From IMG/VR virus record IMGVR_UViG_3300017971_000190, positions 157,680 to 221,679 of that record: a stretch of DNA of 64,000 nt; one strand, written 5' to 3'. Below are positions 19,371-64,000 of the stretch, in pieces (the stretch's first letter is position 1; every line of letters starts with the position of its first letter). The position numbers and the translations under genes were made by a program. Below the pieces are notes generated by a model that was not told where the DNA came from, made no database searches, and saw nothing but the letters and a program-made list of their open reading frames with translations.

Positions 19371-19452
19371 AGATTTGTCTTCTCCTAATGTTGTGAACAA
19401 CTTTCAGGTCGGCATGTTGGTTGGTAATTAGTGGGCCTTCCTGAAACTACTG

Positions 19453-47215: not shown

Positions 47216-47344
47216 TTTTATTTTGTTCTCCCATCGGAAAAAGAGGTTGTTCTATCTTTGTTTAACAAAGTAGTCTATAAAATAAAGTACCGGTGTTACT
47301 GTTTAAACAGGCGGTTTTGTAAATCAAAGTCCAAGGAGACCAAA

Positions 47345-48391: not shown

Positions 48392-48886
48392 TTAGAGCTT
48401 AAGATCTAGAAGATTCTTCTTGCTCTTCTTGGCCTTCTTACCCTTCTTTCCACTACCCTTGGGGCGACCACGCTTACCTGTTTTCTTTGCTGCAGCCTTC
48501 TTCTTGGGAGGACGACCACGACGCTTCTTGGGTGCATCATCGGCAGCCTTCTTCTTGGGAGGACGACCACGACGCTTCTTGGGAGCATCATCGGCAGCCT
48601 TCTTCTTGGGAGGACGACCACGACGCTTCTTGGGAGCATCATCGGCAGCCTTCTTCTTGGGAGGACGACCACGACGCTTCTTGGGTGCCTCTCCATCATC
48701 GGGAGCTTCTACCACCTCTTCTACCACCGTACCGTTAATCGGAACGATGTAGGTAGTGGTGTTCTTACGAGACGTCATCTCGACGGTAAGAACGCCAGCG
48801 CGGGCCTTCACAATGGACCCCTTTGTCAGTAGTCCGAACACCTGTGAAGCGGACATGTTAACAAGCTTGGTTTCTGGTTTTGCCAT
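48392..48886 (-). CDS. multi-AT-hook, Lys-rich DNA-binding protein (HMGA/H1-like)
   Basis: 4x KKRRGRPPKKKAADDAP plus KRGRPKGS; start moved to ATG 48886 (AGGAG SD). Confidence 0.8.
   Translation of the reverse strand: MAKPETKLVNMSASQVFGLLTKGSIVKARAGVLTVEMTSRKNTTTYIVPINGTVVEEVVEAPDDGEAPKKRRGRPPKKKAADDAPKKRRGRPPKKKAADDAPKKRRGRPPKKKAADDAPKKRRGRPPKKKAAAKKTGKRGRPKGSGKKGKKAKKSKKNLLDLKL
48492..48690 (-). repeat. 51-bp tandem repeat, about 4 copies
   Basis: Unit gcagccttcttcttgggaggacgaccacgacgcttcttgggXgcatcatcg at 48492, 48543, 48594 and 48645. Confidence 0.95.
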
Positions 48887-48917
48887 TTGATTTCTCCTAT
48901 GATTTGGCATTTGGGAA

Positions 48918-50540
48918 TTACGACAAATCTCGTCGTATACGGACAAATTGATTAAATCTGGCAACTGCTACTGGATCGGGATCTTTTTGAAAGAGGAAAT
49001 CTATTTTCATGCCTACCAACTCTTTCCTCTGCTTCCACAGCTCCATACGCTGATCAGATCCACCTTTATGTTCCAGACCTCCTCCAACTGCAAATTCCTT
49101 ACCGTCGTACCGTACAATAAAACGACGTAATCGGGCACTGTGTCTAAAGGTTACTACGCCTTTGGGGGTGCAATAAACTCTCCGAGCAGATGAGTCTTTA
49201 GCCGCTTTCTTAAGTCTCTGAATAAACGACTCCAGCTCTTCTACTGTATCAAAAGAAGGTCGAACTTGCAAGTAGTATTTTGTCTTTTTTACCTTTCCAA
49301 CCTTTTTCATTATCCTGTAGATTTTATCCGTAATCTCTGGATCTGCTGCTGCGTTCTTCCCCTTCTTCCCAGGCTCCAACCTCACAATGACTCCAGTAGC
49401 CTCTTCCTCTGCCTTAAATTTAATCACATCAGGGCCTCTGTGGTCATCCAAACGAAGCGGGGCATCTACAGTCTTAATCATTGCTCCCTCAAAACTACGG
49501 TCCAGAGCCCTATTGTAGAATTTATGGAGAGCTTCCTCCATTCTAAGAATTTTGTGGCCTAGAATACCTATGTTAGGGCTTCGATAGTACACCTTGGGGG
49601 TGATCTTTAAAGGATTGAGAGCCGCTCCTTCTTGCGAGCAGCCTAAGAGATGATGTTTGCGTTCTTCCCAAGGCATTTCAAAAATACCAGCTTCGTAGGC
49701 TTTAAGAGGTGCCCAATCCCATACTACAGCTCGAACATCATCTAGAAATTCTGCTTCATTGAAGTTCTTATAACTACTCACGATACTAGAAGTTTTATTC
49801 CACGACTTTGCTAGGAATTCTCCATCAATGAAGACATCTTCTTCAGGGCCTACCAAGTCTCTCGCCAAACTAAAAAGCTGTCTAGTAAAGAGTTCGACAT
49901 TTTCAATATGCTTTTTTCGCCGGTTAGCCCTACTGACTATAATTACCTTTTTGACTTTTTGAAAAATAAAAAGAAGGGCTCTTTCTCCGTCTAATTTATA
50001 CTCACCAGCTTTTGGAAATTTTAATGGTTTGTATTTTTTGGGAAGTCTTTTGTAGGCCAACCCCAACATACACCCTCTAAACTGCATAGAGGCATTGTTA
50101 GTACCAGTCTTACCTTCTGTGAGAAAACCTAAACCAAAAACGGATTTAATTGTTTTCGGACCTACTCCTACACGAAGGTCATGGTCTAAAATTCTCAATA
50201 ACCATTTAGCTACTAGAGGGTCACTTTTGAGAAGTAGAGCTTTGGTTTTAGCAGTAGCTTTTTTAGAACCCCAACGACGCTCTTTAAGGTAACTGGCCAG
50301 CTTAACAAATTTAAGCCAAGAGTCATGTGGAGTTATTTCGGAAGTACAACGGGCGGTTTTTATTATAGGATGAACAAAGTACCGATCCTGCCCAAGAGCC
50401 ATTTTAAAAATGGTTTTTAAAACTGGATTGGTTTTTGTTTCTTCCAAAAGGATTTTTTTCTCTTTGTTCTTTTCGTACACCTCCAGCCTTTCCAAACAAT
50501 TAAAGGCTTCCTCAACTTGTGTTTTGGTGGATTTTTTCAT
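48918..50540 (-). CDS. lig: ATP-dependent DNA ligase
   Basis: EYKLDGER adenylation motif, IDGE, EGAMIK, IKFK, OB-fold C-terminus. Confidence 0.92.
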   Translation of the reverse strand: MKKSTKTQVEEAFNCLERLEVYEKNKEKKILLEETKTNPVLKTIFKMALGQDRYFVHPIIKTARCTSEITPHDSWLKFVKLASYLKERRWGSKKATAKTKALLLKSDPLVAKWLLRILDHDLRVGVGPKTIKSVFGLGFLTEGKTGTNNASMQFRGCMLGLAYKRLPKKYKPLKFPKAGEYKLDGERALLFIFQKVKKVIIVSRANRRKKHIENVELFTRQLFSLARDLVGPEEDVFIDGEFLAKSWNKTSSIVSSYKNFNEAEFLDDVRAVVWDWAPLKAYEAGIFEMPWEERKHHLLGCSQEGAALNPLKITPKVYYRSPNIGILGHKILRMEEALHKFYNRALDRSFEGAMIKTVDAPLRLDDHRGPDVIKFKAEEEATGVIVRLEPGKKGKNAAADPEITDKIYRIMKKVGKVKKTKYYLQVRPSFDTVEELESFIQRLKKAAKDSSARRVYCTPKGVVTFRHSARLRRFIVRYDGKEFAVGGGLEHKGGSDQRMELWKQRKELVGMKIDFLFQKDPDPVAVARFNQFVRIRRDLS

Positions 50541-50561
50541 CGAAGTTTTTGATGAACTTAT

Positions 50562-50604
50562 GGGTGGGAAATGGTAGTCAAAGTTCGCTTACCATTTCCC
50601 ACCC
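50562..50604. terminator. 15-bp perfect inverted repeat, 13-nt loop
   Basis: gggtgggaaatggta / taccatttcccaccc. Confidence 0.65.
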
Positions 50605-50622
50605 TTTTAAAAATGGAGTAAT

Positions 50623-51705
50623 CTAGTCGTCTTCCGCCGTCATCTCCACGATTTCGACATTCATGTTTTGACGGAAGTTCTTTAGACGGAATGTACGACG
50701 TTTGCCTCTGTATTTACCTTCGAGAATGGCAATACTAATTTGCCCTTGGTAGGTCTTAAAAATAATACCTTCCAGACGCTCTCCAGTTTTCTCGTCATCC
50801 CACTGCACAGTCATGCCGCCCTTAAGAGGAAGGGCTTTTTGAGACTTCTGTTGACGTTGCCTACGATTAAGAGCACGAATAAGAGGAGTAATATAGAGAA
50901 TTTGATCCTCATGCACAAAGTTTTTCTGAAGCCAACTGAAAGCAGCAGCAAAAAGCTTAACACCTTCTCCAGACTCAGCATCATCTATAATCTTGGTCCG
51001 CATTTCTAACAGTTTGCGGTAAGACGGTAGTAACCTACGCACGGCTTCCCGAGCAGAGAAAGGAAGCTTGTCATTAAAATCTTCAAACGCCTTAGCATTT
51101 TCTACGTTGACGTAGTATTGCCCACAGCTGAAATTATTTTTAATGACTTTGGTTTTAGGATCGTCGGGATCTAGACGTTCCCCCTCTTTGCAGAAGACTT
51201 GTCCCATTATTTCCCGGTTAAACATGGTACATGTACCACAGGTAATCGGAATAACGTCCCCTACTTCATACTCCTTGTCGTCTACCGTAAATCCTTTTTG
51301 TACTTTGTAGACGGGTGTAGTGTCTTTATCTTTAGCTAGTTTCTTTTTGCGACCGCGCTTCTTCTTTTTCTTAGGCTTCTTCTCACGCTCATCTTCATCG
51401 TCATCATCGGAGTCATCATCATCACCATCGTCAGAATCGGAGTCATCGGAGTCATCATCATCACCATCGTCAGAATCGGAGTCATCATCATCGTCATCAT
51501 CGTCGTCGTCATCATCGTCATCATCGTCGTCGTCCTCATCTACAGTATCATCTGAGTCATCGTCATCGTAATCTTCATACTCTTCATCTTCCTCTTCTTC
51601 GTCCTCAGACTCATCCTCCTCCTCGGTCTCTACATCCTCATACTCGTCCTCTTCATGCCGATGGCTTTTGGACTTTGTGCTGTGCTTTTTTCTCTTCTTA
51701 GCCAT
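50623..51705 (-). CDS. basic-acidic-basic protein with Cys4 domain
   Basis: About 90-aa D/E tract, KKKKKRGRKKK, CGTC..C..C; start moved to ATG 51705 (AAGGAG SD). Confidence 0.75.
   Translation of the reverse strand: MAKKRKKHSTKSKSHRHEEDEYEDVETEEEDESEDEEEEDEEYEDYDDDDSDDTVDEDDDDDDDDDDDDDDDDDDSDSDDGDDDDSDDSDSDDGDDDDSDDDDEDEREKKPKKKKKRGRKKKLAKDKDTTPVYKVQKGFTVDDKEYEVGDVIPITCGTCTMFNREIMGQVFCKEGERLDPDDPKTKVIKNNFSCGQYYVNVENAKAFEDFNDKLPFSAREAVRRLLPSYRKLLEMRTKIIDDAESGEGVKLFAAAFSWLQKNFVHEDQILYITPLIRALNRRQRQQKSQKALPLKGGMTVQWDDEKTGERLEGIIFKTYQGQISIAILEGKYRGKRRTFRLKNFRQNMNVEIVEMTAEDD
51390..51650 (-). repeat. Asp/Glu low-complexity tract including a 39-nt duplication
   Basis: ggagtcatcatcatcaccatcgtcagaatcggagtcatc occurs twice. 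Confidence 0.85.
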
Positions 51706-51771
51706 TACGACTCCTTTGAAGAACAATCTGTTCCTGCTGTGATGCCCAAGGGCGTGTAAAGTGTAGCAGCT

Positions 51772-51799
51772 ATACTACTCAGGTTTACAAAAAAGTCAA
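51772..51799 (-). promoter_or_regulatory. sigma70-type promoter
   Basis: TTGACT-N16-TAGTAT upstream of 50623..51705. Confidence 0.55.
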
Positions 51800-51821
51800 G
51801 TACTTTGTGAGTCTCTAAATT

Positions 51822-52709
51822 TTAGCCCTCCGACACAGCAGCTTCTAATTTTCTGACAGCTTTGACAACCCACGTCAAATCTTTTGAACTTAGATTATAC
51901 TTTTTAGAAAGTGCACTGATTTTTTTGGGTTTTTTAGCATCTAGATAAAGTCGAGCAGCCTTTGACAGGCGTCGTCCTCCTCCTACATCCCATTTTTTTT
52001 CTAGAAAAGTGTACAGCTTTTTACATAGCTCGGTATTTTCTACATTTTCCTCTAAGAGTTTGCAGTGTTCTTTAAATTCTGAACGATCCATATCTTTGAT
52101 TATTCTTAGAATTATAGGAATAAGGACAGCATCTTGGTACTCTATATTATCTCCAGAGAAGCTGCTTTTAATCTCTTTCAAAATTGGAAGTAATTCAGGA
52201 GCCTCGGTTTTTTCCGGTATAGTTGCATTTTTATTTTTAGACTGTTTTTTCCTAGGCTTTATCGTTGTTTGCTTTTTATGACTTTTCCGAGGTGTTATTT
52301 TAATTAAAACAGCATCCTCCTCTATAATGTTTCGTAATTCATCTGCGGTTTTAAAAGACAAAGAGCGAACAACTTTATTATTCTTCATCTCTGCATCGAT
52401 AATTGGAACCCCTAAAGAAAGGAGCTGTTCAGGTTGTCCTTTTCCACAAATTAGAAGGCGATGTATTCTCTTAGCATGACGATAAAGTTCGTGATATTTT
52501 TCAGGAGCTGTTAGGATAACATAGTTTCTAGACTCATCTGTTTGCTTCGGAAGTTTAAATTCTTCTTCTTCTCCCTCAGGTGGGTAAACAAATACTTTAC
52601 CACCAGTATTAGGGGAATGAATGTGAAATACCACCACAAATGTTGGCTTCATAGTTGCAAGCCCAACAGCGTGGACTTTTCTGACTTTTGATTTTTTCTT
52701 TTTTGTCAC
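51822..52709 (-). CDS. hypothetical basic protein
   Basis: 295 aa. Confidence 0.7.
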   Translation of the reverse strand: MTKKKKSKVRKVHAVGLATMKPTFVVVFHIHSPNTGGKVFVYPPEGEEEEFKLPKQTDESRNYVILTAPEKYHELYRHAKRIHRLLICGKGQPEQLLSLGVPIIDAEMKNNKVVRSLSFKTADELRNIIEEDAVLIKITPRKSHKKQTTIKPRKKQSKNKNATIPEKTEAPELLPILKEIKSSFSGDNIEYQDAVLIPIILRIIKDMDRSEFKEHCKLLEENVENTELCKKLYTFLEKKWDVGGGRRLSKAARLYLDAKKPKKISALSKKYNLSSKDLTWVVKAVRKLEAAVSEG

Positions 52710-53215
52710 AGGGCTTGTCTCCTGATTAGATCTACCAGTACTGTTTGTAACCGTTTGCTGGAATTCAATTCCAAAACGGTTTCTTTTCTTTGTGTTTTCG
52801 TTACTACTTTACAACCTTTACTATCAGTTTTTGATAAGGATTTAGTTGATACTAAAGTAACAAGTTTACCAGCACTTATGTAAAAGGGCAACAGTTTAAA
52901 ATTTGTGTTTAGAGATTGATTCAAAAAATCGGTTAAAAGCTTATCCACTCCAATAGAGTGATCGTACATTCTACAAATTTCAACCAATAAAGGTATGGTG
53001 AATTTTGGTCTACCTCTCTTCAATTTCTTATATAGAATTCCATTGGTTAATTTAATTTCAGAGCCTTCGTGTGTTTCCAGTATAATGTGGTCTTTAATTA
53101 GATTAATTCTTCCTACAGTTTCTTCAGGAAGAAAATATTGTAACCAATAATGTAAACTGGTAGATCCTCCATTAGCTAAAGCTGTAAATACTCGAACCAA
53201 CATATCACAATGCAC
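52706..53215 (-). CDS. hypothetical protein with KRGRPK motif
   Basis: 169 aa; overlaps both neighbours. Confidence 0.65.
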   Translation of the reverse strand: MHCDMLVRVFTALANGGSTSLHYWLQYFLPEETVGRINLIKDHIILETHEGSEIKLTNGILYKKLKRGRPKFTIPLLVEICRMYDHSIGVDKLLTDFLNQSLNTNFKLLPFYISAGKLVTLVSTKSLSKTDSKGCKVVTKTQRKETVLELNSSKRLQTVLVDLIRRQAL

Positions 53216-55661
53216 CTTCTGTTGATAACATCTTTGCTGCTAAACGTCGGTATTTCTTTGGAGGAGCTGTTGAAGTATAAAGTTTACTTACATTGTTTTC
53301 TCGAATTGACCACCAAGTCTGGTCCCATACTGAACTGTTAATCACTTCAGGTCTATGACTTATTACAAATATAGAAGAGAATCTTTCTTTAAGCATTTCT
53401 AAAATGGAGAGTAGGCTTTCTTCTCCAGGAGGATCTAAATTACCAAAAGGTTCGTCAATAATCAAAATATTAAAAGAGCTATCTGTATAAAGCTCTTTTA
53501 AATCTCTCATTCCAAGTAGGAAAGCTAACCCAGCTTTATGTTTCTCTCCACCGCTCAATAACTGACTCTTAACTGATGATTTTCTACCTTTACGACAAAG
53601 ATAGAACTGAAGATTATTTTCTCCTCCGAATTCTAAGCTTACTTTCTTACGAGGCCATAACATGGAAGAATAGGCAGGAATTGTTTTTTCAGTGGCCTCT
53701 TTTAAAATATGTTGAAATCTAGCTTGTTTCATTCCTTGGGGATGAAAAGCAGTTTTAAGAGCCTTGAAACACGTTAGTTTATTCTGTAATTTAGAACTTT
53801 CTTTTAATTTGGAAGTTAGTTCTGAAATCCTTTCCAATAGACTTTTTATGTGATTTATTTTTATTTCTAATTTGGCTGCTTTGCTGCTATATTTTTTGTA
53901 TCGGCTACTCAAAGTTCTTACATCAGTTTTTAATTGCTGAACTGTTTTCGATACTTCATTTTTGTTTCCTCTTGGAAGAGGTTTAAGCTCCAAGTTAATA
54001 CGTCGTATTTTAATAACTACCTCTACCAATTTTTTAAGCTCTCGATAATTATTCCTGATTTTAGGCAGTTTTGTTTTAATGTCTTCCAAATTTCCTTCAG
54101 GTAGTGCTTCTAACAATGTCTCTAAACGTTCTTTTTGCTTTACAAGTTCAAGAATGGATGACAACTTACGTTCTTTTTTCTGAAGTTTAGTTATTTTAGT
54201 GTTTATTTCTTGAAGTGTGGAATCACAGTCAATAGTCTTTAGTTGATCTGCCAACCTAAGATATTGTTCATAAGATTCGAGAGATGACTTGAGTTTGAAA
54301 TTTCTACGTTTTTTCTTTTTTAATGCATCTCTCGAAGAAGCCAACTTAATTTGCAGTTCATCAACTTGTTCTTTAGTTAGATTTCTAGCTTGACCACATG
54401 TTGGGCAAACACCTTTTTCCAATCTATGATTAACAGATTTTATTGTACTGGTTAATTCTGCTATTGCAGAAATTTGAGCTTCGTTTTCTTCTTGAAGCTT
54501 ATGAATATTCGTTGGTGGTTTTTCGATTTGGGAAAGGTCTTCTTGCAGTTCTAGTTTCTTCTCTGCTTTTGGTAGCTCTACAACTTTTAAATGGTGTAAA
54601 GTTGTTTTTAGGCTAGTTAAGTCTTCTTCTATAGATTCCAATGATTCAATTTCTTCTAAAGACTCATCTAATTTACTTAACTGACTTTCAATAACAGATC
54701 TTCTTCTAAGATCTTCTTCTTGATTTTCAAGAGTGATTTTCTTTTTAGCTAAATTTTTGAGAGACTCTTGCAAAGATTTAAGTGCAACTTTAGTAAGTTG
54801 TTTTTTCTGTTCAAATTTAGGTTTCAGAAGATGGTCGTATTTAGACCATAAAGTTTGCAGTTCTTCCTCTTTGGTAAAACGCAGCTTAAGAGATGCTAGT
54901 AATTCTTGCTGCTCCTCTAATTCGTTTTGAGTTGCAATAAAACCTGCCTGCATAGCATCTGCTTTTTGAGCTGCTTTTACGTACTTATTTTTTAGGGTTT
55001 TAAGCTTGCCTGCTTTTTCTAACTGACTTTCTATTTCTTCAATTTGAGCTTTTAATCTATCAAGTTGAGAAATTTCAGTTTCTACCAAACTAATTTGTGT
55101 ATTTAATTGACTATAAAAATCATCGTAGACATTTAAACTAAACATTACGGTTAGTTTTTTACGACGTTCTCCGTCTTTACCGTGCAAGAGCACGTGATTC
55201 AAATCTTGGGTTAGATAAACTAAATTGAAGAAGCTAGTCTCATCAATCTGAAGAAGCTGGTCTCTAATCCAAGTATGAGGATGTTTTCTATGCTCTCTGG
55301 GTAAGATATCTTTTCCTGTATCTAAATCTAAAACTTCTACTTTATTGCCATATAGATTATGTTTTCTAAATTGATTAATTTGAATAGGTCGGTCATCTAT
55401 TTTTAAACGAAGACTTTTCTCCAAATTTTTCTTAGCTGAGAAATTAATAATATCGTCAGCTGTATCTTTCTTTCCGCTTTTTCCTACAAGTAAACGAGCT
55501 AAGCTATCAGGAACTGTGCTTTTTCCAGATCCTAAAAATCCCCCATCATCTAAATTTAAACCTCTATGTATAACTAAACCCTGATTAGCCAAAGGAATTT
55601 CAGCTGACAAATAAATAGAGGCATTTCTCAGCCTGAAATCTAACAATTCAATGGTAGGCAT
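53205..55661 (-). CDS. sbcC: SbcC/Rad50-like SMC ATPase
   Basis: Walker A GSGKST, zinc hook CPTCG, signature LSGGE, Walker B/D-loop IIDEPFGNLD, long coiled coils. Confidence 0.92.
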   Translation of the reverse strand: MPTIELLDFRLRNASIYLSAEIPLANQGLVIHRGLNLDDGGFLGSGKSTVPDSLARLLVGKSGKKDTADDIINFSAKKNLEKSLRLKIDDRPIQINQFRKHNLYGNKVEVLDLDTGKDILPREHRKHPHTWIRDQLLQIDETSFFNLVYLTQDLNHVLLHGKDGERRKKLTVMFSLNVYDDFYSQLNTQISLVETEISQLDRLKAQIEEIESQLEKAGKLKTLKNKYVKAAQKADAMQAGFIATQNELEEQQELLASLKLRFTKEEELQTLWSKYDHLLKPKFEQKKQLTKVALKSLQESLKNLAKKKITLENQEEDLRRRSVIESQLSKLDESLEEIESLESIEEDLTSLKTTLHHLKVVELPKAEKKLELQEDLSQIEKPPTNIHKLQEENEAQISAIAELTSTIKSVNHRLEKGVCPTCGQARNLTKEQVDELQIKLASSRDALKKKKRRNFKLKSSLESYEQYLRLADQLKTIDCDSTLQEINTKITKLQKKERKLSSILELVKQKERLETLLEALPEGNLEDIKTKLPKIRNNYRELKKLVEVVIKIRRINLELKPLPRGNKNEVSKTVQQLKTDVRTLSSRYKKYSSKAAKLEIKINHIKSLLERISELTSKLKESSKLQNKLTCFKALKTAFHPQGMKQARFQHILKEATEKTIPAYSSMLWPRKKVSLEFGGENNLQFYLCRKGRKSSVKSQLLSGGEKHKAGLAFLLGMRDLKELYTDSSFNILIIDEPFGNLDPPGEESLLSILEMLKERFSSIFVISHRPEVINSSVWDQTWWSIRENNVSKLYTSTAPPKKYRRLAAKMLSTEGAL

Positions 55662-55678
55662 GGTGTGGTAGGAAAGAG

Positions 55679-55885
55679 TTAGGAGTTGAGCTTTTTGATA
55701 AAAGCTGCTAACGTAGTTATTGGAATAAGACGCCTACTTCTTTTTCGCAATCCAGAATTTAAATGTTCAATTTGCTCATCTTCCAGTTGTACAGATACAA
55801 GTATTTTAGAGGGGTCTTCTTCAAATTGTTTTCCAACATCTCTTACATTTCGTCCAACAATACCTTCATAATTTTTTTTAGGCAT
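55679..55885 (-). CDS. small hypothetical protein
   Basis: Likely start ATG 55885 (MPKKNYEG). Confidence 0.55.
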   Translation of the reverse strand: MPKKNYEGIVGRNVRDVGKQFEEDPSKILVSVQLEDEQIEHLNSGLRKRSRRLIPITTLAAFIKKLNS

Positions 55886-55886
55886 T

Positions 55887-56126
55887 TTATTTTCCAGCTG
55901 TTCTATGCGATTCGATCTCACTTTCTAAACGAGAAAGAGCCGCTGGAATAGGATCAAATTCAATCTCACCGTTTTTGCTGGTTCCAGTACAAGAACCATT
56001 AAGACAATGCGCTACAACCGGTACCCCATAATTGGTGAGCTTGTAAGGATTTTCTGTGTCGATAATTCTATAGTCTTTAATTTCCGCTAAAAAATGTCTA
56101 GTACCACCACAAACTTTACAACGCAT
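55887..56126 (-). CDS. small Zn-binding protein
   Basis: CKVC...CLNGSC. Confidence 0.65.
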   Translation of the reverse strand: MRCKVCGGTRHFLAEIKDYRIIDTENPYKLTNYGVPVVAHCLNGSCTGTSKNGEIEFDPIPAALSRLESEIESHRTAGK

Positions 56127-56131
56127 AGGTC

Positions 56132-58929: not shown

Positions 58930-58936
58930 TTAAAAA

Positions 58937-59857
58937 CTAGTCGGCAAAAACTCTGGCAAATATTTCCTCTGGGCTTTTATCACTAGTGAATCCAGAAGCA
59001 GCTTTGTGTCCACCACCTCCAAAATGCTGGGCAAAAGAAGAGACGTCAAAACCATTATCACTAGCTCTCAAACTATAAACGTACTCACCGTCATTTTTCT
59101 GAAACCAACACACTCCCATATCACAACCTTTTACTAAGGCCAACTCTTCTCCAACTTCACTTTGCAGAATAGGACTATTGGCAATCATAACTTTAACAAC
59201 AGAAAAACCAGGAACAGAAGCTGCAACTCCAGGCCACGCTCCAGCTAGTAAAGATTTTTTCTGTTGATCTTGTGACCTTAAAATAGCTGCTCCATAACCA
59301 GAAACAGCATTTGGCAGTGTGGGTTCAGCGTCAGAAGATGTTTTAAGAAAATTTAGAATTTGAATCCAGGTTTCAATGTCTCTAGGCCAACTAGCTAACC
59401 ATGCGTTTACTTCTCTGCTTCCCAATAATTTCCATTGCCACAAATCTCTATCCTGAACGTAACCAACTAATTGTTCAAGAATAGATTTGATTTCTTTAAA
59501 CTCTTTGCTAGCAGCTGTAGGCAAACCTTTTACTAAATCAAATGCGAGTTGTGCTCCACTTCTGTTCATATCAAAAGTGGCAAAATCTAAACCTTCACAA
59601 TTGTTTTTAGCAGTTTCGTGATGATCTAAAACAATAAGATTGGAGGCAATTTCGTTCATGTGCACTAACGTATCTCGTGAATAACTAAAATCGACAATCC
59701 ATATGTCTCTATCTGTAATAACTTCATCTGGAGGAGGATCTTCTCCATATTGAGCAGACATGACTTCTGCTTTTTCACCCAAGCCTAAATAGAGAACAAG
59801 GGCTCCACAAATCCCATCACTACAACCCCGGTGATGTATAATCAAAGATTCTTCCAT
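58937..59857 (-). CDS. DHH/DHHA1 phosphoesterase
   Basis: CSDG, VDFS, LDHH, GGGGHKAASG. Confidence 0.9.
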   Translation of the reverse strand: MEESLIIHHRGCSDGICGALVLYLGLGEKAEVMSAQYGEDPPPDEVITDRDIWIVDFSYSRDTLVHMNEIASNLIVLDHHETAKNNCEGLDFATFDMNRSGAQLAFDLVKGLPTAASKEFKEIKSILEQLVGYVQDRDLWQWKLLGSREVNAWLASWPRDIETWIQILNFLKTSSDAEPTLPNAVSGYGAAILRSQDQQKKSLLAGAWPGVAASVPGFSVVKVMIANSPILQSEVGEELALVKGCDMGVCWFQKNDGEYVYSLRASDNGFDVSSFAQHFGGGGHKAASGFTSDKSPEEIFARVFAD

Positions 59858-60918
59858 TAGACTTTTTTCTTTCGCTTGTATTGTTTAGGAATAGGAACTT
59901 TAACACCTAAACTTTTTCCAATTTTCCTCAAATACCGCCAGCTGCGACCTTTCATCTTGTGGCTTAATCCAGCTTCATCTAAGTAGTCGTCAAGTTGAGC
60001 AAATAATCCAAACTCTATATTTTCTAGATTGCTTGTTCTTTGACGTTTAAACAACTTAGCATTTGGATGATATTTAACATTTGGAGGCAATTCTCCAACA
60101 GCAGCATCTGCGAGAGTTTCGGGTTCAAAATCTATAAAAGCATCTGACGGAATTTCTTCTGGTAATTTTGAACAATGTATAAGCGGTGAGCTAGTAATTG
60201 GAATAATTTCAGGTTCGGTAGGATTATCTGTATCTACTAAAAGAACACCTTTGGGTAATTTTTCATCAAAGCGAGTTTGATGAGGTGAACCACTATACCA
60301 GGCATTGGAGATTATCTTTTGGCACTTGTGAACATCTCCCAAAGCCCAGTAGGTAACTCTTGGAAACAAATTTTCCACAAGTACAATTTGTCCCCCTTTT
60401 TCTTTTACAAAACCTGTATCTGTTTTTGCCCCTCTTAGATATTCATGAAGTACAACCACAATAGGTAAATCATCTTCTGGAATATTTTCTAAGATAGCTT
60501 CAAGCAGTAACCTAAATTCGTTATTAGTCCAGTCTGCAAAAGGGAACAGAATAAAATAACAACCCTTTTTCTTAAAGAAAGAAGGGTAATTATCATAAAC
60601 AAAATGTTTTTTATGTTTTATTTTAGAAAGATAGCTAAGGGACGTATCCCCCAAATCTTCAGATCTATCTTCATGATTTCCGCTTATAGCAATAATAGGA
60701 AGGGGGCATGAACCAAGCCAATCGCTCAATAGTTGCCGTTCAAGGTGAGTAATACTTTTACTATGATAAATATCTCCAGCTACTACAATTAAATCAGCTT
60801 CATGTATAACAGCAATATCAGTTATACTCTGAAGTGTCTTCTCCACCCTCCTTAAAAATCCATCAAATTCTCTAAGGGCATTCAGGTGAATATCCGCCGT
60901 ATGGAGGAAACGAGTCAC
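59857..60918 (-). CDS. sbcD: SbcD/Mre11-like metallophosphoesterase nuclease
   Basis: ADIH, GDIYH, GNHE, LGDVH. Confidence 0.88.
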   Translation of the reverse strand: MTRFLHTADIHLNALREFDGFLRRVEKTLQSITDIAVIHEADLIVVAGDIYHSKSITHLERQLLSDWLGSCPLPIIAISGNHEDRSEDLGDTSLSYLSKIKHKKHFVYDNYPSFFKKKGCYFILFPFADWTNNEFRLLLEAILENIPEDDLPIVVVLHEYLRGAKTDTGFVKEKGGQIVLVENLFPRVTYWALGDVHKCQKIISNAWYSGSPHQTRFDEKLPKGVLLVDTDNPTEPEIIPITSSPLIHCSKLPEEIPSDAFIDFEPETLADAAVGELPPNVKYHPNAKLFKRQRTSNLENIEFGLFAQLDDYLDEAGLSHKMKGRSWRYLRKIGKSLGVKVPIPKQYKRKKKV

Positions 60919-60966
60919 TGAACTTAACCTGTTTAAGATTTAGAAGGAGGGTGGAAAAAGACCTAA

Positions 60967-61296
60967 TTAAAGGTCCCAGCCGCGCACAGTCTTACGACCA
61001 TTACGAAGGGTGCGAAGACACGCTTTTTTGATCATAGCATAAAGCTCATTGGCCAGCCATGCCTCAATATCTTTCTCAGCACGAAGACCGGTAGCTTTCA
61101 GCACTTCCTTAACCTTAGAAGTAGTCACAATTTTAACACCCACGTCTGCTTTCGCTTTCTTAATGCGAGCTTTTACCTGCTTTGCTGTAGGTGCATCACC
61201 AGCAGGAGTTCCAGCTTTCTTGTTTGTACTTCCCTTAGGACGCCCGCGCTTCTTAGGAGCTGCATCTGTTTTCTTTGTTCTCTTCTTTTTTGGCAT
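60967..61296 (-). CDS. bacterial-type histone-fold protein with Lys-rich N-terminal tail and AT-hook
   Basis: C-terminal IVTTSKVKEVLK..GLR..........L..MIKKAC......GRKTVRGWD resembles Bdellovibrio Bd0055 (VVTSKVKKLIK...GRKTVMARD, recalled); RKT-x4-D clamp. Confidence 0.85.
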   Translation of the reverse strand: MPKKKRTKKTDAAPKKRGRPKGSTNKKAGTPAGDAPTAKQVKARIKKAKADVGVKIVTTSKVKEVLKATGLRAEKDIEAWLANELYAMIKKACLRTLRNGRKTVRGWDL

Positions 61297-61325
61297 TTGA
61301 TGTTTCCTTTCGTTGCCAAAGGTTG

Positions 61326-61829
61326 CTACGGTTCAGTTACAATCACAACCTTATTTGATTTTCCGAAGTACGATTTAACAATTTTTCTCACTTCTTTTTT
61401 CCAATTTAAACCACCATTCCCACACCCGGGTTTTGGTAATAACACTCTCCTCCAATTTCTTTTCAATATCAGTTTATTTAACTGTTTACAACTTGTTTCT
61501 ATAAGCTCTAAATCCGCTTTATCTTTCCAGTGATACTTAACAGGAAAGGATACAATATGCCACGGAACAGCCACCAAAAGAGGATCTGTTCTCCTAGGTA
61601 AAGAAAGATAAGGAACCGCAGCATCGTTTTTAGTTAGAACCCTAACTCTGTTTCCTTTTTTACTTAATTTAGTGCCTAGTAACTTTTGTAGACCATACCA
61701 AGAACGAGCCGCTTGAAGTGCGACTCCTCTCCCCATTACTGCACCACCATCTTTTTTAACATCTCCGTTGGTAGTAATAACAATGGCATCCGCTTTTTCG
61801 AGAAACATATTACAACGTTTAATTTTCAT
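61326..61829 (-). CDS. macrodomain (ADP-ribose binding/hydrolase) protein
   Basis: ADAIVITTN..GGAVMGRGVA, IVSFPVK, LPKPGCGNGGLNW. Confidence 0.88.
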   Translation of the reverse strand: MKIKRCNMFLEKADAIVITTNGDVKKDGGAVMGRGVALQAARSWYGLQKLLGTKLSKKGNRVRVLTKNDAAVPYLSLPRRTDPLLVAVPWHIVSFPVKYHWKDKADLELIETSCKQLNKLILKRNWRRVLLPKPGCGNGGLNWKKEVRKIVKSYFGKSNKVVIVTEP

Positions 61830-63145
61830 TAGCTCGCCATTTCTTCTTCTAGTTCTTCATCATTTCTAGTTTGTTTTTTAGAACGTTTTTTCCCTTTTTT
61901 ACCTTGCTTACGTCTGCGTCTACGTAAGTCTCTGTATTCAGATCCTTCTTCTTCTACGCGACGTTGAACCTCTTCCTGATCTATTTCTTCTTCTTCATAT
62001 TCTTCAAAATCTTGATCATAGAAATAATTTTGAGGTCCGTCATGTTGCATATATTCTTCAAATACCCTATCTTTTTTCAAACGCCTGAATAAAAAAGCTC
62101 TAAATTTCGGATTTTCAACATGTTGTCGGAATTTCATCCAACTGAGCTTCTTAGTTTCTTTTTTGGGGAAAACAATTTGACGCAATCCATTACCAGTTAC
62201 TTTAAGATGACCAGTCTTTTTAAGGAAGACTTCAGCATCTAGAGATCTATCTAAACCACGTGCAAGAATAATTCCTAATCCCTCTAAAATCCGGTGAGGC
62301 ATAAATACTTTATTTTTTGTTGTTCTAGCTGTAATCGGAAGAACATCAACTTTGGTTTTATCTTTAACCAGTTTCCGTCTGGTAAGCATTATTTTTTGGT
62401 CAGGATAATACATAAGGGCAGCTCCACCATATTCTTTTTGTGGATTGCCCCATTGACCAATTGCAGTTCTCATTTGATTAGAACCTAGTAAAAGAGCGCC
62501 TTTCCTCTTAAGACGTGGGCGAATCATTTGAAGGAAATTGCTATGCATTCTAGCTTGCGGAGCAATACGACCCTCACCAGTTTCGTCGTCTACTTCTTCA
62601 GAACTCATAGCAGCAAAACTATCTACCAAAAATACAATTTGAGGTGGTTTATTTTCTACCTCTGGGAGGGCTTTTAAAGTAACGAGAATATGTCTGTACA
62701 TTTGTTCACCAAAATCAGGCTGACAATAAAAATAATTCGGGTACTCAATCTTATTACCTGTTTTAGCTGGTGTCCCATTTTTATTAATCTTTGGCAAAAC
62801 AATGCTGTGATCTAGATCGATACCTTGATTACTCATGTAAACCGGATCAGATCCACTTTCAAAATCATAATGAACTACAGTAATAAAATTCATTTGACAA
62901 CTAACAATTAATTCCTGCAATAGTGTACTCTTCCCACAACCTTCTGGCCCGAAAATAGTTACAAATTTTCCTGAAGGAAATCCACCCCCTAAAATTAAAT
63001 CTATAGAAAGGCTACCAGAAGATACAGTATTGTGTACTCGTCTAGCCTCTTTAAGAGGAGCACAATCCAAACCTTTAACAGCTTTAAAAGCATTAATGGC
63101 TGCAATTGCTGGATGAAATGCAAAGACGGGTTTCTTGGCTCCCAT
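61829..63145 (-). CDS. recA: RecA-family recombinase with charged C-terminal extension
   Basis: SLSIDLILGGG, GPEGCGKST, VDSFAAM, NQMR..IG..GNPQ...GG.AL.Y. Confidence 0.92.
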   Translation of the reverse strand: MGAKKPVFAFHPAIAAINAFKAVKGLDCAPLKEARRVHNTVSSGSLSIDLILGGGFPSGKFVTIFGPEGCGKSTLLQELIVSCQMNFITVVHYDFESGSDPVYMSNQGIDLDHSIVLPKINKNGTPAKTGNKIEYPNYFYCQPDFGEQMYRHILVTLKALPEVENKPPQIVFLVDSFAAMSSEEVDDETGEGRIAPQARMHSNFLQMIRPRLKRKGALLLGSNQMRTAIGQWGNPQKEYGGAALMYYPDQKIMLTRRKLVKDKTKVDVLPITARTTKNKVFMPHRILEGLGIILARGLDRSLDAEVFLKKTGHLKVTGNGLRQIVFPKKETKKLSWMKFRQHVENPKFRAFLFRRLKKDRVFEEYMQHDGPQNYFYDQDFEEYEEEEIDQEEVQRRVEEEGSEYRDLRRRRRKQGKKGKKRSKKQTRNDEELEEEMAS

Positions 63146-63168
63146 GAATTTTGTACCTTTTCATTTTG

Positions 63169-63534
63169 TTACGAAACTAATAACTTATAAAGTTCGTCAT
63201 AACTTTTAGTACCGTGATGCCGTGATATTTCTTTCCCAACATAAAAAATTCTTAATTGTGGTAGTATCGAAACAGAAAAGTAATTTAGTATCTCTTCTGA
63301 CTTTACATTTACTGCTACAATTAGATTATTTTGATGGTTTTCTCTAACTAAAAAATTATCAATAACAGTAGTAAAATGTTTACTAATAGGATTATCACTA
63401 AATAAATAAAGAATAAAAGATTCACCTAGCGATGATAAAGCACTTGGAATATACCACGGTACTTCTAAACAAGAACGCTGATGTAAAGTCTTAGCATCAT
63501 TCCAGGTTCCTGTATATTTCCAACTGCGTACCAT
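63169..63534 (-). CDS. thioredoxin-fold protein lacking CxxC
   Basis: VAVNV..FSVSILPQLRIFYVGKEISRHHG matches the C-terminal half of the Trx fold (cis-Pro). Confidence 0.5.
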   Translation of the reverse strand: MVRSWKYTGTWNDAKTLHQRSCLEVPWYIPSALSSLGESFILYLFSDNPISKHFTTVIDNFLVRENHQNNLIVAVNVKSEEILNYFSVSILPQLRIFYVGKEISRHHGTKSYDELYKLLVS

Positions 63535-63567
63535 CGCCAGTAATCTGGTTCTTTTATCTACAAATTA

Positions 63568-63762
63568 TTATCGTTTGATTGAAAGCAGTATCGTGTTTAA
63601 ATCCACACAAGGAGCTAACCAGATACACTTTTTGCACCGTGGTTTTTCACGATAATAACCATAGCAAGTTGGACTATTTCTTGCGCTTCTTTTTAGTTTT
63701 CTTATTTTTGCTGCCCTTTGGACGTCCACGCTTTTTCGGAGCTGCCTTTTTCTTTTTGGCAT
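63568..63762 (-). CDS. candidate small Cys4 protein overlapping the poly-Asp gene in another frame
   Basis: MPKRKRQ...CYGYYREKPRCKKCIWLAPC; weak SD. Confidence 0.4.
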   Translation of the reverse strand: MPKRKRQLRKSVDVQRAAKIRKLKRSARNSPTCYGYYREKPRCKKCIWLAPCVDLNTILLSIKR

Positions 63763-64000
63763 CTTTGCGCTTCTTACTATACCTACGTTTCTTAGGCGCT
63801 GGTTCTTCGTCATCATCGTCGTCGTCATCATCATCGTCATCATCGTCATCATCATCATCATCATCGTCGTCATCGTCGTCGTCATCATCGTCGTCATCAT
63901 CGTCGTCATCATCGTCGTCATCATCGTCGTCATCATCGTCATCATCGTCGTCATCATCGTCGTCATCATCGTCGTCATCATCGTCGTCATCATCGTCGTC
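63674..64000 (-). CDS. C-terminal part of a poly-Asp/AT-hook protein (5' end outside window)
   Basis: Manual translation: D64-EEPAPKKRRYSKKRKDAKKKKAAPKKRGRPKGSKNKKTKKKRKK-stop (TAG at 63674). The supplied MMTT.. ORF is a shadow frame. Confidence 0.85.
   Translation of the reverse strand, partial: DDDDDDDDDDDDDDDDDDDDDDDDDDDDDDDDDDDDDDDDDDDDDDDDDDDDDDDDDDDDDDDDEEPAPKKRRYSKKRKDAKKKKAAPKKRGRPKGSKNKKTKKKRKK
63809..64000 (-). repeat. GAY codon repeat encoding at least 64 consecutive Asp
   Basis: Uninterrupted mixed gtc/atc triplets up to the window edge. Confidence 0.95.

What the first reader, a model, noticed from the sequence alone, without database searches (positions are those of the whole stretch)
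48392..64000. A phage 'chromatin toolkit': tailed histone, AT-hook proteins, poly-acidic chaperone-like proteins and a macrodomain in one replication cluster
Seen within 16 kb: a histone fold with a roughly 50-aa Lys-rich tail; a 5-AT-hook protein; two proteins pairing long Asp/Glu tracts with basic tails; a macrodomain; SbcCD, RecA and ligase. A near-identical module APKKRGRPKGS(T/K)NKK is shared by the histone and the poly-Asp protein, with KRGRPKGS in the AT-hook protein and KRGRPK in 52706..53215. Known: tailed histones, HMGA AT-hooks, acidic chaperones (nucleoplasmin, NAP1) and macrodomains together are hallmarks of eukaryotic chromatin; bacterial Bd0055-type histones are short and tailless. 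Inference: this phage builds a nucleoprotein state for its roughly 38% GC genome (compaction, shielding from restriction/CRISPR, or host nucleoid silencing), with acidic proteins as loaders.
Basis: partly seen in the sequence, partly recalled or inferred. Interest (0 to 1): 0.88.

Follow-up and report, generated by a model that had tools for sequence, protein, structure and literature searches.

The report
Huge-phage histone and AT-hook proteins
A group of uncultivated huge phages keeps four DNA-organising genes inside its replication and recombination genes: a bacterial-type histone with a lysine-rich tail, an HMGA-like protein made of AT-hooks, and two extremely acidic proteins, which suggests the phages organise DNA with their own chromatin-like proteins; the neighbouring macrodomain is a separate DarG-type DNA de-ADP-ribosylation enzyme.

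Summary
On the minus strand of 48.4-64 kb, a huge phage (contigs up to 298 kb) encodes five relevant proteins:
- a face-to-face (FtF) alpha3 histone with a 37-residue lysine-rich tail that carries a canonical AT-hook;
- a protein with five AT-hooks;
- two proteins with 91- and about 220-residue Asp/Glu tracts flanked by basic segments;
- a macrodomain.
They sit among RecA/UvsX, SbcCD, a clamp loader and a ligase.

Seven distinct related phage lineages keep the same gene order: poly-acidic protein, Trx-like, RecA, a variable slot, histone, SbcD, clamp loader, SbcC, two unknowns, N-acidic protein, ligase, AT-hook protein. So four of the five "toolkit" genes are co-inherited.

The macrodomain is not part of the set. 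It occurs only in this lineage and is DarG-type, with the catalytic Lys, the thymine-stacking Trp and the Gly-rich loop. It is most likely an anti-DarT enzyme.

Lys-tailed viral FtF histones were already described in 2024-25. I did not find the following described in the papers I could search: the AT-hook in the histone tail, the conserved HMGA-like partner, the hyper-acidic partners, and the fixed RecA-histone-SbcD position.

The chaperone role proposed for the acidic proteins is untested. An SSB-like or CarD-like role is equally open.

Verdict: a new variant of a known kind, of moderate to high interest.

The parts
60967..61296 (-). FtF-type alpha3 histone, 109 aa. Lys-rich disordered tail (residues 1-37) with one type-I AT-hook (KKRGRPKGSTNKK), an extra helix a0 (38-56), and the histone fold (57-109) with an RxTxxxxD motif.
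   Evidence: PDB 9qt0 sequence match, E 5.8e-4. 37 relatives at E<=1e-3 among 1.84 billion cluster representatives. A profile reaches PF09123/PF00808 'histone H3/H4' proteins. AF2 model. Foldseek best match HLp, TM 0.91. Sits directly upstream of SbcD in 7 of 7 lineages.
48392..48964 (-). HMGA-like multi-AT-hook protein. Small N-terminal domain, four copies of PKKRRGRPPKKK and one KRGRPKGS, and a short hydrophobic C-terminal tip (NLLDLKL). The true start is probably the ATG at 48910 or 48886.
   Evidence: An orthologue lies directly after the ligase in 5 of 5 lineages that cover that position. The L014 orthologue scores 43.3 bits on Pfam AT_hook (cut-off 17.4); the window protein scores 13.0.
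48492..48685 (.). 51-nt tandem repeat, 3.8 copies, 99% matches. It encodes the AT-hook units.
50623..51726 (-). N-acidic protein, 367 aa. Short basic N-terminus, a 91-residue Asp/Glu tract, a KKKKKRGRKKK segment, then a conserved C-terminal domain of about 230 aa that belongs to no known family.
   Evidence: Homologues lie upstream of the ligase in 6 of 6 lineages, all with an acidic N-terminal region. No Pfam or PHROG match.
63674..64000 (-). C-terminus of the poly-Asp protein: the end of the Asp tract plus a basic tail with an AT-hook (APKKRGRPKGSKNKK). The gene runs off the window. The full protein is 486 aa, with a 250-aa N-terminal domain.
   Evidence: Homologues with acidic tails occur in L006, L011, L013 and L103.
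61326..61829 (-). DarG-type macrodomain, 167 aa. Not part of the conserved set.
   Evidence: phrog_335, E 5e-24. Pfam Macro 21.6 bits against a cut-off of 22. PDB 5m3i/5m31 (DarG macrodomains), E 4e-10, with FPVKYHW aligned to FPTKKHW and GCGNGGL aligned to GAGNGGL. Present in the window lineage only.
61829..63145 (-). RecA/UvsX-like recombinase with an acidic-then-basic C-terminal tail.
   Evidence: Pfam RecA, E 1e-31. phrog_97 UvsX-like, E 2e-45.
63169..63534 (-). Small thioredoxin-like protein, conserved between the poly-acidic gene and RecA.
   Evidence: Weak Pfam Thioredoxin match. Conserved position.
59857..60918 (-). SbcD/Mre11-like nuclease, directly downstream of the histone.
   Evidence: Pfam Metallophos. 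Synteny.
58937..59857 (-). DHH phosphoesterase. Found at this position in the window lineage only.
57295..58929 (-). N6/N4 DNA methyltransferase with Lys-rich inserts. Found at this position in the window lineage only.
56132..57298 (-). Clamp-loader AAA+ subunit (DNA_pol3_delta2).
53205..55661 (-). SbcC/Rad50-like ATPase.
52706..53215 (-). Conserved 169-aa protein of unknown function. Its KRGRPK is not conserved in homologues.
51822..52709 (-). Conserved 295-aa protein of unknown function with Lys-rich segments.
48918..50540 (-). ATP-dependent DNA ligase.
   Evidence: 40% identity to the L006 ligase.

Best explanation
The region is the replication and recombination module of an uncultivated huge phage. 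Its clade has built a conserved set of DNA-architectural proteins into that module.

(a) Histone. It is a face-to-face (FtF) alpha3 histone of the 'viral FtF histone' kind. By analogy with Leptospira HLp it most likely forms a tetramer that wraps about 60 bp. [quoted passage not shown]

(b) HMGA-like protein. It is a string of AT-hooks on a small N-terminal domain. It probably bends or opens AT-rich DNA, and it may be tethered to the replisome through a C-terminal clamp-binding-like tip.

(c) Two proteins with very long acidic disordered tracts next to basic or AT-hook segments. They most likely act as polyanionic, DNA-mimicking counter-ions. They would buffer or exchange the basic proteins, or auto-inhibit their own DNA-binding ends, as in HMGA and CarD acidic regions and in SSB acidic tails.

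I infer that together they coat and organise the phage's own replicating, 38% GC DNA.

Shown here: the folds, the motifs, and conservation with fixed synteny. Inferred: the oligomeric state, DNA wrapping, the target DNA, and the role of the acidic tracts.

The macrodomain is a separate, lineage-specific DarG-like enzyme. It most likely removes DarT-type ADP-ribose from DNA.
For: Phage identity:
- Portal and large terminase (TerL) are present.
- Contigs reach 298 kb.
- TerL is 26-29% identical to PaBG-type jumbo phages.

Histone:
- In the alignment it keeps the HLp tetramer-interface residues R49, N53 and R55 (here R95, N99, R101).
- It keeps the RD clamp (R101-D108).
- It keeps the DNA-contact residues S14, K15, K17, K21 and T57 (here S60, K61, K63, K67, T103). 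Residue roles are from PMC12701072.

Conservation:
- The same gene order holds in seven distinct lineages whose histone folds are only 40-47% identical.
- The AT-hook protein follows the ligase in 5 of 5 lineages.
- The N-acidic protein precedes the ligase in 6 of 6.
- The poly-acidic protein lies upstream of Trx-like and RecA wherever that region is covered.

AT-hook quality:
- The core plus flank RGRPKGSKNK is identical to the second hook of mouse HMGA2 (PMC13192832).
- It fits the plant type-I GSKNK class (PMC12430185).
- The L014 orthologue passes the Pfam AT_hook cut-off.
- Synonymous divergence with a conserved peptide shows selection on the module.

Acidic tracts are conserved as a feature across lineages although their composition varies.

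Macrodomain. A phage-encoded DarG-like anti-defence protein is a published precedent (PMC13309987).
Against: - Nothing here is experimental.
- No multimer or DNA-complex model could be run.
- The window histone gives no Pfam histone match, even at E 10.
- The monomer model is only moderately confident (pLDDT 69).
- Tail length varies from 10 to 52 residues. The AT-hook in the tail is confined to the window lineage and one other relative. The tail hook is therefore an elaboration, not a core feature.
- A published survey found no association between histones and chromatin-related domains in tailed phages.
- The globular domains of the acidic proteins have no assignable fold or family.
- Charged low-complexity stretches also occur in structural genes of this phage.
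- Sequence cannot say whether phage or host DNA is bound.
Confidence: 0.5

Rival explanations
1. Replisome and recombination accessory set, not chromatin. The poly-acidic protein is the phage's single-stranded-DNA-binding protein, or a CarD-like hub with an oversized acidic tail. The histone is an accessory factor of the RecA/SbcCD recombination machinery. The AT-hook protein is a clamp-tethered replication or late-transcription factor. The charged tracts mediate protein-protein contacts inside the replisome.
For: - The histone is wedged between RecA and SbcD in 7 of 7 lineages.
- The poly-acidic protein lies two genes upstream of RecA. It has a beta-rich N-domain with conserved Cys and His residues, followed by an acidic tail.
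- The L103 homologue's tail carries repeated acidic-aromatic DDxWGD motifs, as SSB tails do.
- Against T4 gp32 alone, hhalign aligns the IRF...CPxC segment at E 0.0033.
- Weak BFVD matches include 'DNA binding protein' and 'ssDNA binding domain protein'.
- The AT-hook protein's C-terminal tips, ASLFDESF and NLLDLKL, resemble the clamp-binding C-termini of T4 gp43 and gp33.
Against: - Against a seven-member gp32 profile the match collapses to probability 0.2%.
- There are no Pfam, PHROG or PDB sequence matches.
- The fold model is poor (pLDDT 56), and the PDB fold search returned noise.
- The histone keeps the DNA-wrapping and tetramer residues of HLp.
- The clamp-tip similarity is a short motif only.
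Confidence: 0.25
2. Host takeover. The basic proteins are made to bind and silence or compact the host nucleoid, or to displace host nucleoid proteins. The polyanionic proteins act as DNA mimics that soak up host DNA-binding defences such as restriction enzymes or silencers.
For: - Phage- and prophage-encoded nucleoid proteins with AT-hook-like motifs (Lsr2/CgpS type) are known to act on AT-rich DNA.
- Extreme polyanions of net charge -136 and -47 resemble DNA mimics in charge. That comparison rests on my own knowledge of Ocr-type proteins.
- An anti-defence gene, the DarG-like macrodomain, sits in the same block.
Against: - The genes are embedded in the replication and recombination operons, not in an early host-takeover region.
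- The host is unknown. The phage CRISPR repeat and the histone gave no genome match.
- The phage itself is AT-rich at 38% GC, so it is at least as good a target.
Confidence: 0.15
3. Packaged DNA-condensing proteins. The histone and the AT-hook protein are loaded into the large capsid with the DNA to neutralise charge, and are ejected with the genome.
For: - The genome is very large, 220-350 kb.
- The proteins are strongly basic, with net charges of +23 and +41.
Against: - The genes lie in the replication module, about 25 kb from the portal and terminase genes at 20.6-25.8 kb, and are syntenic with RecA, SbcCD and the ligase.
- There is no virion proteome.
Confidence: 0.07
4. Compositional coincidence or assembly artefact. 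The charged tracts are low-complexity noise, and the histone similarity is spurious.
For: - Contigs, and the window itself, break inside the GAT/GAC tract.
- Charged stretches are frequent in this phage.
Against: - Two independent assemblies span the Asp tract with the same 486-aa product.
- All four genes and their tracts are conserved in divergent lineages.
- RGRP occurs 35 to 45 times more often than expected.
- The structural match to HLp has TM 0.91.
Confidence: 0.03

Closest known systems
Viral face-to-face histones (VFFH) of Caudoviricetes (hLife 2025, PMC13681535) and bacterial FtF alpha3 histones such as HLp of Leptospira perolatii (PDB 9QT0, PMC12701072)
   Same: - Truncated-alpha3 histone fold.
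- RxTxxxxD motif and RD clamp.
- HLp tetramer-interface residues are kept.
- Lys-rich N-terminal tail within the 5-40 residue range reported for VFFH.
   Different: - An extra conserved helix (a0) precedes the fold.
- The tail carries a canonical AT-hook.
- The gene position between RecA and SbcD is fixed, and HMGA-like and hyper-acidic partner genes are conserved with it. The VFFH paper mentions none of this.
Schwab et al. 2024 'phage histones' category (for example A0A2E7QIQ9)
   Same: An alpha3-type histone fold encoded by tailed phages.
   Different: That category has the fold at the N-terminus, followed by a C-terminal tetramerisation helix, and lacks the RxTxxxD motif. Here the fold is C-terminal, the motif is present, and there is no C-terminal helix.
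Eukaryotic HMGA proteins and plant AHL type-I AT-hooks; Myxococcus CarD (HMGA-like C-terminal domain)
   Same: - Multiple RGRP hooks flanked by Lys/Arg and Pro.
- The flank RGRPKGSKNK is identical to hook 2 of HMGA2.
- An acidic region adjoins the hooks: in the poly-Asp protein, and in the acidic C-tail of the L014 orthologue.
- As in CarD, a globular N-domain is followed by an acidic region and then one or more hooks.
   Different: - The proteins are phage-encoded.
- The N-terminal domains are unrelated to CarD_TRCF and match no family.
- The acidic tract is about ten times longer than in HMGA.
- The window's own multi-hook protein uses an RRGRPP variant and falls below the Pfam cut-off.
- No common descent is shown.
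DarG macrodomain of the DarTG toxin-antitoxin and phage-defence system, and phage DarG-like anti-defence proteins
   Same: - The best PDB matches are the DarG macrodomains.
- The catalytic Lys, His/Trp and Gly-rich ADP-ribose loop are conserved.
- There is a phage-encoded precedent.
   Different: It is a stand-alone 167-aa macrodomain, without DarG's C-terminal DarT-binding part and without a DarT neighbour. Its activity has not been tested.
Acidic-tailed phage SSBs (T4 gp32) and acidic histone chaperones (nucleoplasmin, NAP1)
   Same: A globular domain plus an acidic disordered tail, located next to a recombinase. The polyanion-beside-basic-partner logic is the same.
   Different: - The gp32 profile comparison failed.
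- No nucleoplasmin or NAP domain was detected.
- The tract length and its terminal AT-hook have no counterpart that I know of.
Phage- and prophage-encoded Lsr2/CgpS-type nucleoid proteins
   Same: Virus-encoded nucleoid-associated proteins that read AT-rich DNA through an AT-hook-like motif.
   Different: Lsr2 uses a single RGR loop inside a folded domain plus an oligomerisation domain. Here there are arrays of canonical hooks in disordered chains, together with a histone.

Membership tests
FtF (face-to-face) alpha3 histones / VFFH | Histone fold with a truncated alpha3 helix | tested here: met
   AF2 helices at 59-68 and 77-98, and a 3-residue a3. Foldseek gives HLp 9qt0 at TM 0.91 and rmsd 0.6 A, then HTkC 9f2c.
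FtF (face-to-face) alpha3 histones / VFFH | RxTxxxxD motif / R-D clamp | tested here: met
   R101, T103 and D108 are invariant in a 22-sequence alignment. They align to HLp R55 and D62.
FtF (face-to-face) alpha3 histones / VFFH | Tetramer-interface residues conserved in tetrameric FtF histones (HLp R49, N53, R55) | tested here: met
   R95, N99 and R101 align to them and are invariant in A1. Their role is taken from PMC12701072.
FtF (face-to-face) alpha3 histones / VFFH | Forms a stable tetramer and wraps or bends DNA | not testable with these tools
   No multimer or DNA-complex prediction was available, and there is no experiment.
FtF (face-to-face) alpha3 histones / VFFH | Lys-rich N-terminal tail of 5-40 residues (VFFH description) | tested here: met
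   37-residue disordered tail with 13 Lys/Arg.
Pfam histone models (PF00808 CBFD_NFYB_HMF, PF09123 DUF1931) | Score above the gathering cut-off | tested here: not met
   The window protein and its fold domain give no match at E up to 10. Relatives found with the profile do carry these Pfam labels.
Schwab 2024 'phage histone' category | N-terminal fold plus C-terminal tetramerisation helix; no RxTxxxD | tested here: not met
   The fold is C-terminal, the motif is present, and there is no C-terminal helix.
AT-hook motif (PF02178) | R-G-R-P core flanked by basic residues | tested here: met
   Eight cores in four genes. The flanks match HMGA2 hook 2 and the type-I GSKNK class.
AT-hook motif (PF02178) | Pfam gathering score (17.4 bits) | tested here: inconclusive
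   Window protein 13.0 bits, L015 orthologue 14.9 bits, L014 orthologue 43.3 bits.
HMGA family proper | Small, fully disordered protein with three hooks and an acidic C-tail, of eukaryotic descent | tested here: not met
   There is an N-terminal domain of about 65 residues, 4-7 hooks, and an acidic C-tail only in L014. It works like HMGA but is not a member.
DarG-type macrodomain | Catalytic Lys (TaqDarG K80), the adjacent His/Trp, and the GxGNGG ADP-ribose loop | tested here: met
   K98, H100, W101 and G135-G140 align to them. Residue roles are from PMC5179494.
DarG-type macrodomain | C-terminal DarT-binding domain and an adjacent darT gene | tested here: not met
   The protein is 167 aa, with RecA and the histone as neighbours.
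DarG-type macrodomain | Hydrolyses thymidine-linked ADP-ribose on DNA | not testable with these tools
   This needs an enzyme assay or a DarT rescue test.
T4 gp32-type SSB | Detectable homology to the gp32 OB-fold/Zn domain | tested here: not met
   hhalign against gp32 alone gives E 0.0033 and probability 9.8%. Against a seven-member gp32 profile it gives probability 0.2%. There is no Pfam or PHROG match.
Acidic histone chaperones (nucleoplasmin, NAP1) | Nucleoplasmin core or NAP domain | tested here: not met
   No such Pfam match in either acidic protein.
Acidic histone chaperones (nucleoplasmin, NAP1) | Binds the histone and hands it to DNA | not testable with these tools
   This needs binding and deposition assays, or complex prediction.

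The most novel reading that the evidence does not exclude
A clade of huge phages runs a minimal, self-encoded chromatin system. Tetramers of the FtF histone and an HMGA-like AT-hook protein coat the replicating phage genome. Polyanionic proteins of up to net charge -136 act as chaperones or DNA mimics, or drive electrostatic condensation into a replication compartment. The result would shield the DNA from nucleases and CRISPR, a protein-coat alternative to the phage nucleus.
Probability: 0.2. Interest if true: 0.85.

Novelty: new variant of a known kind. Interest (0 to 1): 0.6.

Why it matters
Histones in tailed phages were catalogued only recently, and by fold alone. Nothing is known of their partners or roles, and the published survey found no link to chromatin-related genes.

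This locus gives that class a concrete genetic context:
- a fixed place between the recombinase and the Mre11/Rad50-type nuclease;
- a conserved HMGA-like partner;
- two conserved polyanionic partners.

It also shows the same AT-hook peptide, identical to a vertebrate HMGA2 hook, grafted onto three different proteins.

This turns "do phages build chromatin?" into a testable four-protein reconstitution. It also offers a case, independent of eukaryotes, of the histone, AT-hook and acidic-region combination. The DarG-type macrodomain adds a candidate anti-DarT gene in a huge phage.

Tried and rejected
1. gp32-type SSB identity for the N-domain of the poly-Asp protein. A single-sequence hhalign looked suggestive, but a seven-member gp32 profile did not support it. 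The AF2 model was poor, so the PDB fold search returned noise. BFVD gave only weak hits.

2. Family assignment. Pfam, PHROGs and PDB sequence searches found nothing for either acidic protein's globular domain, the AT-hook protein's N-domain, or the 169-aa and 295-aa proteins.

3. A word-indexed homologue search of the poly-Asp N-domain returned nothing.

4. Close relatives among deposited phages. There was no DNA match, and no tblastn match for the histone or the poly-acidic N-domain.

5. Host assignment. The phage CRISPR repeat and the histone patterns gave no hit in GTDB representative genomes, and the window holds no tRNAs.

6. The macrodomain as a chromatin reader. Rejected in favour of a DarG-type hydrolase.

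7. The KRGRPK in 52706-53215 as a fourth AT-hook protein. It is not conserved in homologues.

8. Promoter and terminator scans showed no enrichment over shuffles.

9. Recent gene conversion as the source of the shared module. Rejected, because 8 of the 9 base differences are synonymous.

Full report
**What the window is.** All genes in 48.4-64 kb lie on the minus strand. The window carries a portal (phrog_16240, E 8e-73) and a large terminase (TerL; phrog_17415, E 3e-94) at 20.6-25.8 kb. The histone gene is found, identical, on metagenomic contigs of 93, 191, 222 and 298 kb. One of these is an IMG/VR viral genome. TerL is only 26-29% identical to jumbo phages such as PaBG, NCTB and the Rhizobium RHph phages. 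No deposited phage matches the region at the DNA level. This is therefore an uncultivated huge phage with about 38% GC.

**Check of the observation.**
- Ligase, SbcC, clamp loader, N6/N4 methyltransferase, DHH phosphoesterase, SbcD, RecA/UvsX and a macrodomain are supported by Pfam and PHROGs.
- The 190-aa protein at 48392-48964 has five RGRP cores. Four lie in a 51-nt tandem repeat whose copies are 99% identical.
- The 367-aa protein at 50623-51726 has a 91-residue tract that is at least 80% Asp/Glu.
- The poly-Asp reading frame at the window's end is the C-terminus of a 486-aa protein, read in full on two longer contigs. Its acidic tract is about 220 residues and its net charge is -136. Two other contigs, and the window itself, end inside this GAT/GAC tract, which is an assembly break.
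- The shared module is AAPKKRGRPKGS(T/K)NKK in the histone and the poly-Asp protein. Over 14 codons, 13 residues but only 33 of 42 bases are identical, and 8 of the 9 differences are synonymous. The peptide is maintained by selection; it was not copied recently.
- RGRP is expected about 0.2 times in the window's proteins and is seen 7 to 9 times, eight of them in this block.

**The histone.**
- The 109-aa protein matches the Leptospira histone HLp (PDB 9qt0, deposited as a DUF1931 protein) by sequence at E 5.8e-4.
- An exhaustive HMMER search of 1.84 billion cluster representatives found only 37 relatives at E<=1e-3. A profile built from them reaches proteins labelled PF09123 or PF00808, 'histone H3/H4'.
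- The AlphaFold2 model (pLDDT 69) shows a disordered tail (1-37), an extra helix a0 (38-56), a1, a2 and a three-residue a3.
- Foldseek puts HLp first (TM 0.91, rmsd 0.6 A, 40% identity). The archaeal FtF histone HTkC comes next, then eukaryotic H4 and H3.
- In the alignment the phage protein keeps HLp's tetramer-interface residues R49, N53 and R55, the R55-D62 clamp, and several DNA-contact residues. Their roles come from the HLp paper.
- It is therefore an FtF-type alpha3 histone, and by analogy probably a DNA-wrapping tetramer.
- It does not fit the 'phage histone' category of Schwab et al., which has a C-terminal tetramerisation helix and lacks the RxTxxxD motif.

**What is already known about such histones.** Schwab et al. 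note that bacterial FtF histones commonly have positively charged N-terminal tails. A metagenomic survey (bioRxiv 2024, hLife 2025) defined 'viral face-to-face histones' in Caudoviricetes, with Lys-rich N-terminal tails of 5-40 residues. That survey found no association between histones and chromatin-related domains in tailed phages. It does not mention AT-hooks, HMG-type proteins, gene neighbourhoods or RecA. Two overviews of jumbo-phage biology do not mention histones or AT-hooks at all.

**Conservation and co-occurrence.**
- I fetched relatives through the histone, the poly-acidic N-domain, the ligase and the N-acidic C-domain. I annotated them with one script.
- The conserved order is: sigma factor, poly-acidic protein, Trx-like, RecA, one variable slot, histone, SbcD, clamp loader, SbcC, p169, p295, N-acidic protein, ligase, AT-hook protein, p281.
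- This order holds in every locus that covers the relevant part. The loci are the window phage, L006/L014 (80 kb), L102 (350 kb), L103-105, L008/009, L010, L011, L013, L015 and L106.
- The histone folds are only 40-47% identical to the window's, so these are distinct lineages.
- The histone sits directly upstream of SbcD in 7 of 7. The AT-hook protein follows the ligase in 5 of 5. The N-acidic protein precedes the ligase in 6 of 6.
- The poly-acidic homologue keeps an acidic tail in L006, L011, L013 and L103.
- The globular domains are truly homologous: 31% identity at E 2e-33, and 23% identity at E 2e-16.
- The four genes therefore do not assort independently.
- Lineage-specific features are the long tail (10-52 residues), the AT-hook in the tail (window lineage and one other relative), the pure poly-Asp composition, and the DHH and methyltransferase genes.

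**The AT-hooks.**
- The orthologue in L014 scores 43 bits on Pfam AT_hook, against a cut-off of 17.4. The window's RRGRPP variant scores 13 bits.
- In L102 the repeat unit is APKKRGRPKGSKNK. This is the same peptide that ends the window's poly-Asp protein. In L015 the unit equals the window's histone-tail module.
- One hook unit has thus been placed on three different proteins within the clade.
- RGRPKGSKNK is identical to the second hook of mouse HMGA2 and fits the plant type-I GSKNK class.
- The combination of an acidic region with AT-hooks is the hallmark of HMGA, and of the only classical prokaryotic example, Myxococcus CarD.
- The poly-Asp protein, built as a globular N-domain, an acidic region and then a hook, is CarD-like in layout.
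- The orthologous AT-hook proteins end in ASLFDESF, or NLLDLKL in the window. This resembles the C-termini of T4 gp43 (KASLDFLFG) and gp33 (NTLDFLL). From established knowledge of T4, those tips bind the gp45 sliding clamp. This is a lead only.

**The acidic proteins.** Neither globular domain matches any Pfam, PHROG or PDB family. I tested the idea that the poly-acidic protein is a gp32-type SSB with an exaggerated acidic tail.
- Against T4 gp32 alone, hhalign gave a local match over the IRF...CPxC segment (E 0.0033, probability 9.8%).
- Against a gp32 profile it gave nothing (probability 0.2%).
- The AF2 model is poor (pLDDT 56) and the PDB fold search returned noise.
- BFVD gave weak matches to unnamed proteins, whose accession series suggest (my inference) that they come from the jumbo phages nearest by terminase. 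It also matched a 'DNA binding protein' and an 'ssDNA binding domain protein'.

Membership in gp32 is not supported, and an SSB-like role remains possible. A histone-chaperone role rests on charge alone.

**The macrodomain.** Its best PDB matches are the DarG macrodomains of M. tuberculosis and T. aquaticus, at E 4e-10 (their identity is confirmed in PMC5179494). The catalytic Lys, the neighbouring His and Trp, and the Gly-rich ADP-ribose loop are conserved. It is present only in the window lineage. The same slot holds a D12 Dam-like gene, sometimes with an HNH endonuclease, in the other lineages. A phage DarG-like anti-defence protein has been reported. It is best read as a counter-measure to DarT-type DNA ADP-ribosylation, not as part of a chromatin set.

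**Mechanism and rivals.**
- Best reading (confidence 0.5): a conserved set of phage nucleoid proteins acts on the phage's own AT-rich replicating DNA. The histone tetramer wraps DNA, the AT-hooks anchor in the minor groove, and the polyanionic tracts act as exchangeable DNA mimics or counter-ions.
- Rival 1 (0.25): a replisome and recombination accessory reading, with an SSB-like hub, a clamp-tethered AT-hook factor and a histone that assists RecA/SbcCD.
- Rival 2 (0.15): takeover of the host nucleoid, or decoys for host defences.
- Rival 3 (0.07): packaged DNA-condensing proteins.
- Rival 4 (0.03): an artefact.

Folds, motifs and co-inheritance are shown here. Oligomeric state, target DNA and the function of the acidic tracts are inferred.

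**Verdict.** The case is a new variant of a known kind, with interest 0.6.

Noticed in passing
L001 1-2216 (same phage, about 4-6 kb beyond the window's 64000 end): A gene of the TnpB/Cas12 type (Cas12f1-like_TNB domain; called product 584 aa, cut by the locus end) is followed by a CRISPR-like array. The array has seven copies of a 36-nt repeat spaced 71-76 nt apart. A Cas4-like PD-(D/E)XK gene (phrog_1706) lies 0.6 kb further on. This looks like a compact phage-borne CRISPR system. The repeat has no exact match in GTDB representative genomes.
   Followed up: partly
window 63807-64000; ends of L003 and L004: The window and two long contigs (222 and 298 kb) all end inside the GAT/GAC poly-Asp tract. 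This is an assembly break at a 12-nt-period repeat. The true tract length may vary, although two assemblies agree on 486 aa.
   Followed up: yes
window 48392-48420; L015 3105-3135; L102 and L103 AT-hook genes: The orthologous AT-hook proteins end in ASLFDESF, or NLLDLKL in the window. This resembles the C-terminal tips of T4 gp43 (KASLDFLFG) and gp33 (NTLDFLL), which bind the sliding clamp. The AT-hook protein may therefore be clamp-tethered.
   Followed up: partly
window 8186-11605: A run of small ORFs (88-118 aa) on the coding strand begin with Arg-rich stretches, or carry them near the N-terminus (MLRRRRRR, LKRRRRRV, LRRHRRRRRR). They may be a paralogous family of small basic proteins in the structural half of the genome.
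   Followed up: no
window 23454-25784 and 17532-19400: The large terminase has an N-terminal KTKKKKRRKKKK stretch. A 622-aa ATPase-like protein has a stretch with 11 Asp/Glu in 12 residues. Charged low-complexity segments are therefore not confined to the replication module.
   Followed up: no
L006 7899-10195; L011 8223-9954; L008 1925-2611; L102 and L103 between RecA and the histone: The slot between RecA and the histone is variable. It holds the macrodomain in the window lineage. Elsewhere it holds a D12 Dam-like methyltransferase-like gene, in two lineages together with an HNH endonuclease next to the histone. In L006 the longest ORF at that position spans both the HNH-like segment and the histone.
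   Followed up: partly
L103 3-722: The poly-acidic homologue in this lineage has no poly-Asp run. Its tail is instead built of repeated acidic-aromatic DDxWGD / DEGWG motifs, a pattern reminiscent of SSB C-terminal interaction tails.
   Followed up: no
window 47258-48346 (+): This is the only sizeable plus-strand ORF in the neighbourhood (362 aa). It has no Pfam or PHROG match and sits at the boundary between the structural and replication blocks.
   Followed up: no
window 13234-16326: A 1030-aa protein has a weak SprT-like metalloprotease match at its N-terminus (E 6e-5, below the Pfam cut-off). Most large proteins in 1-48 kb have no family at all.
   Followed up: no
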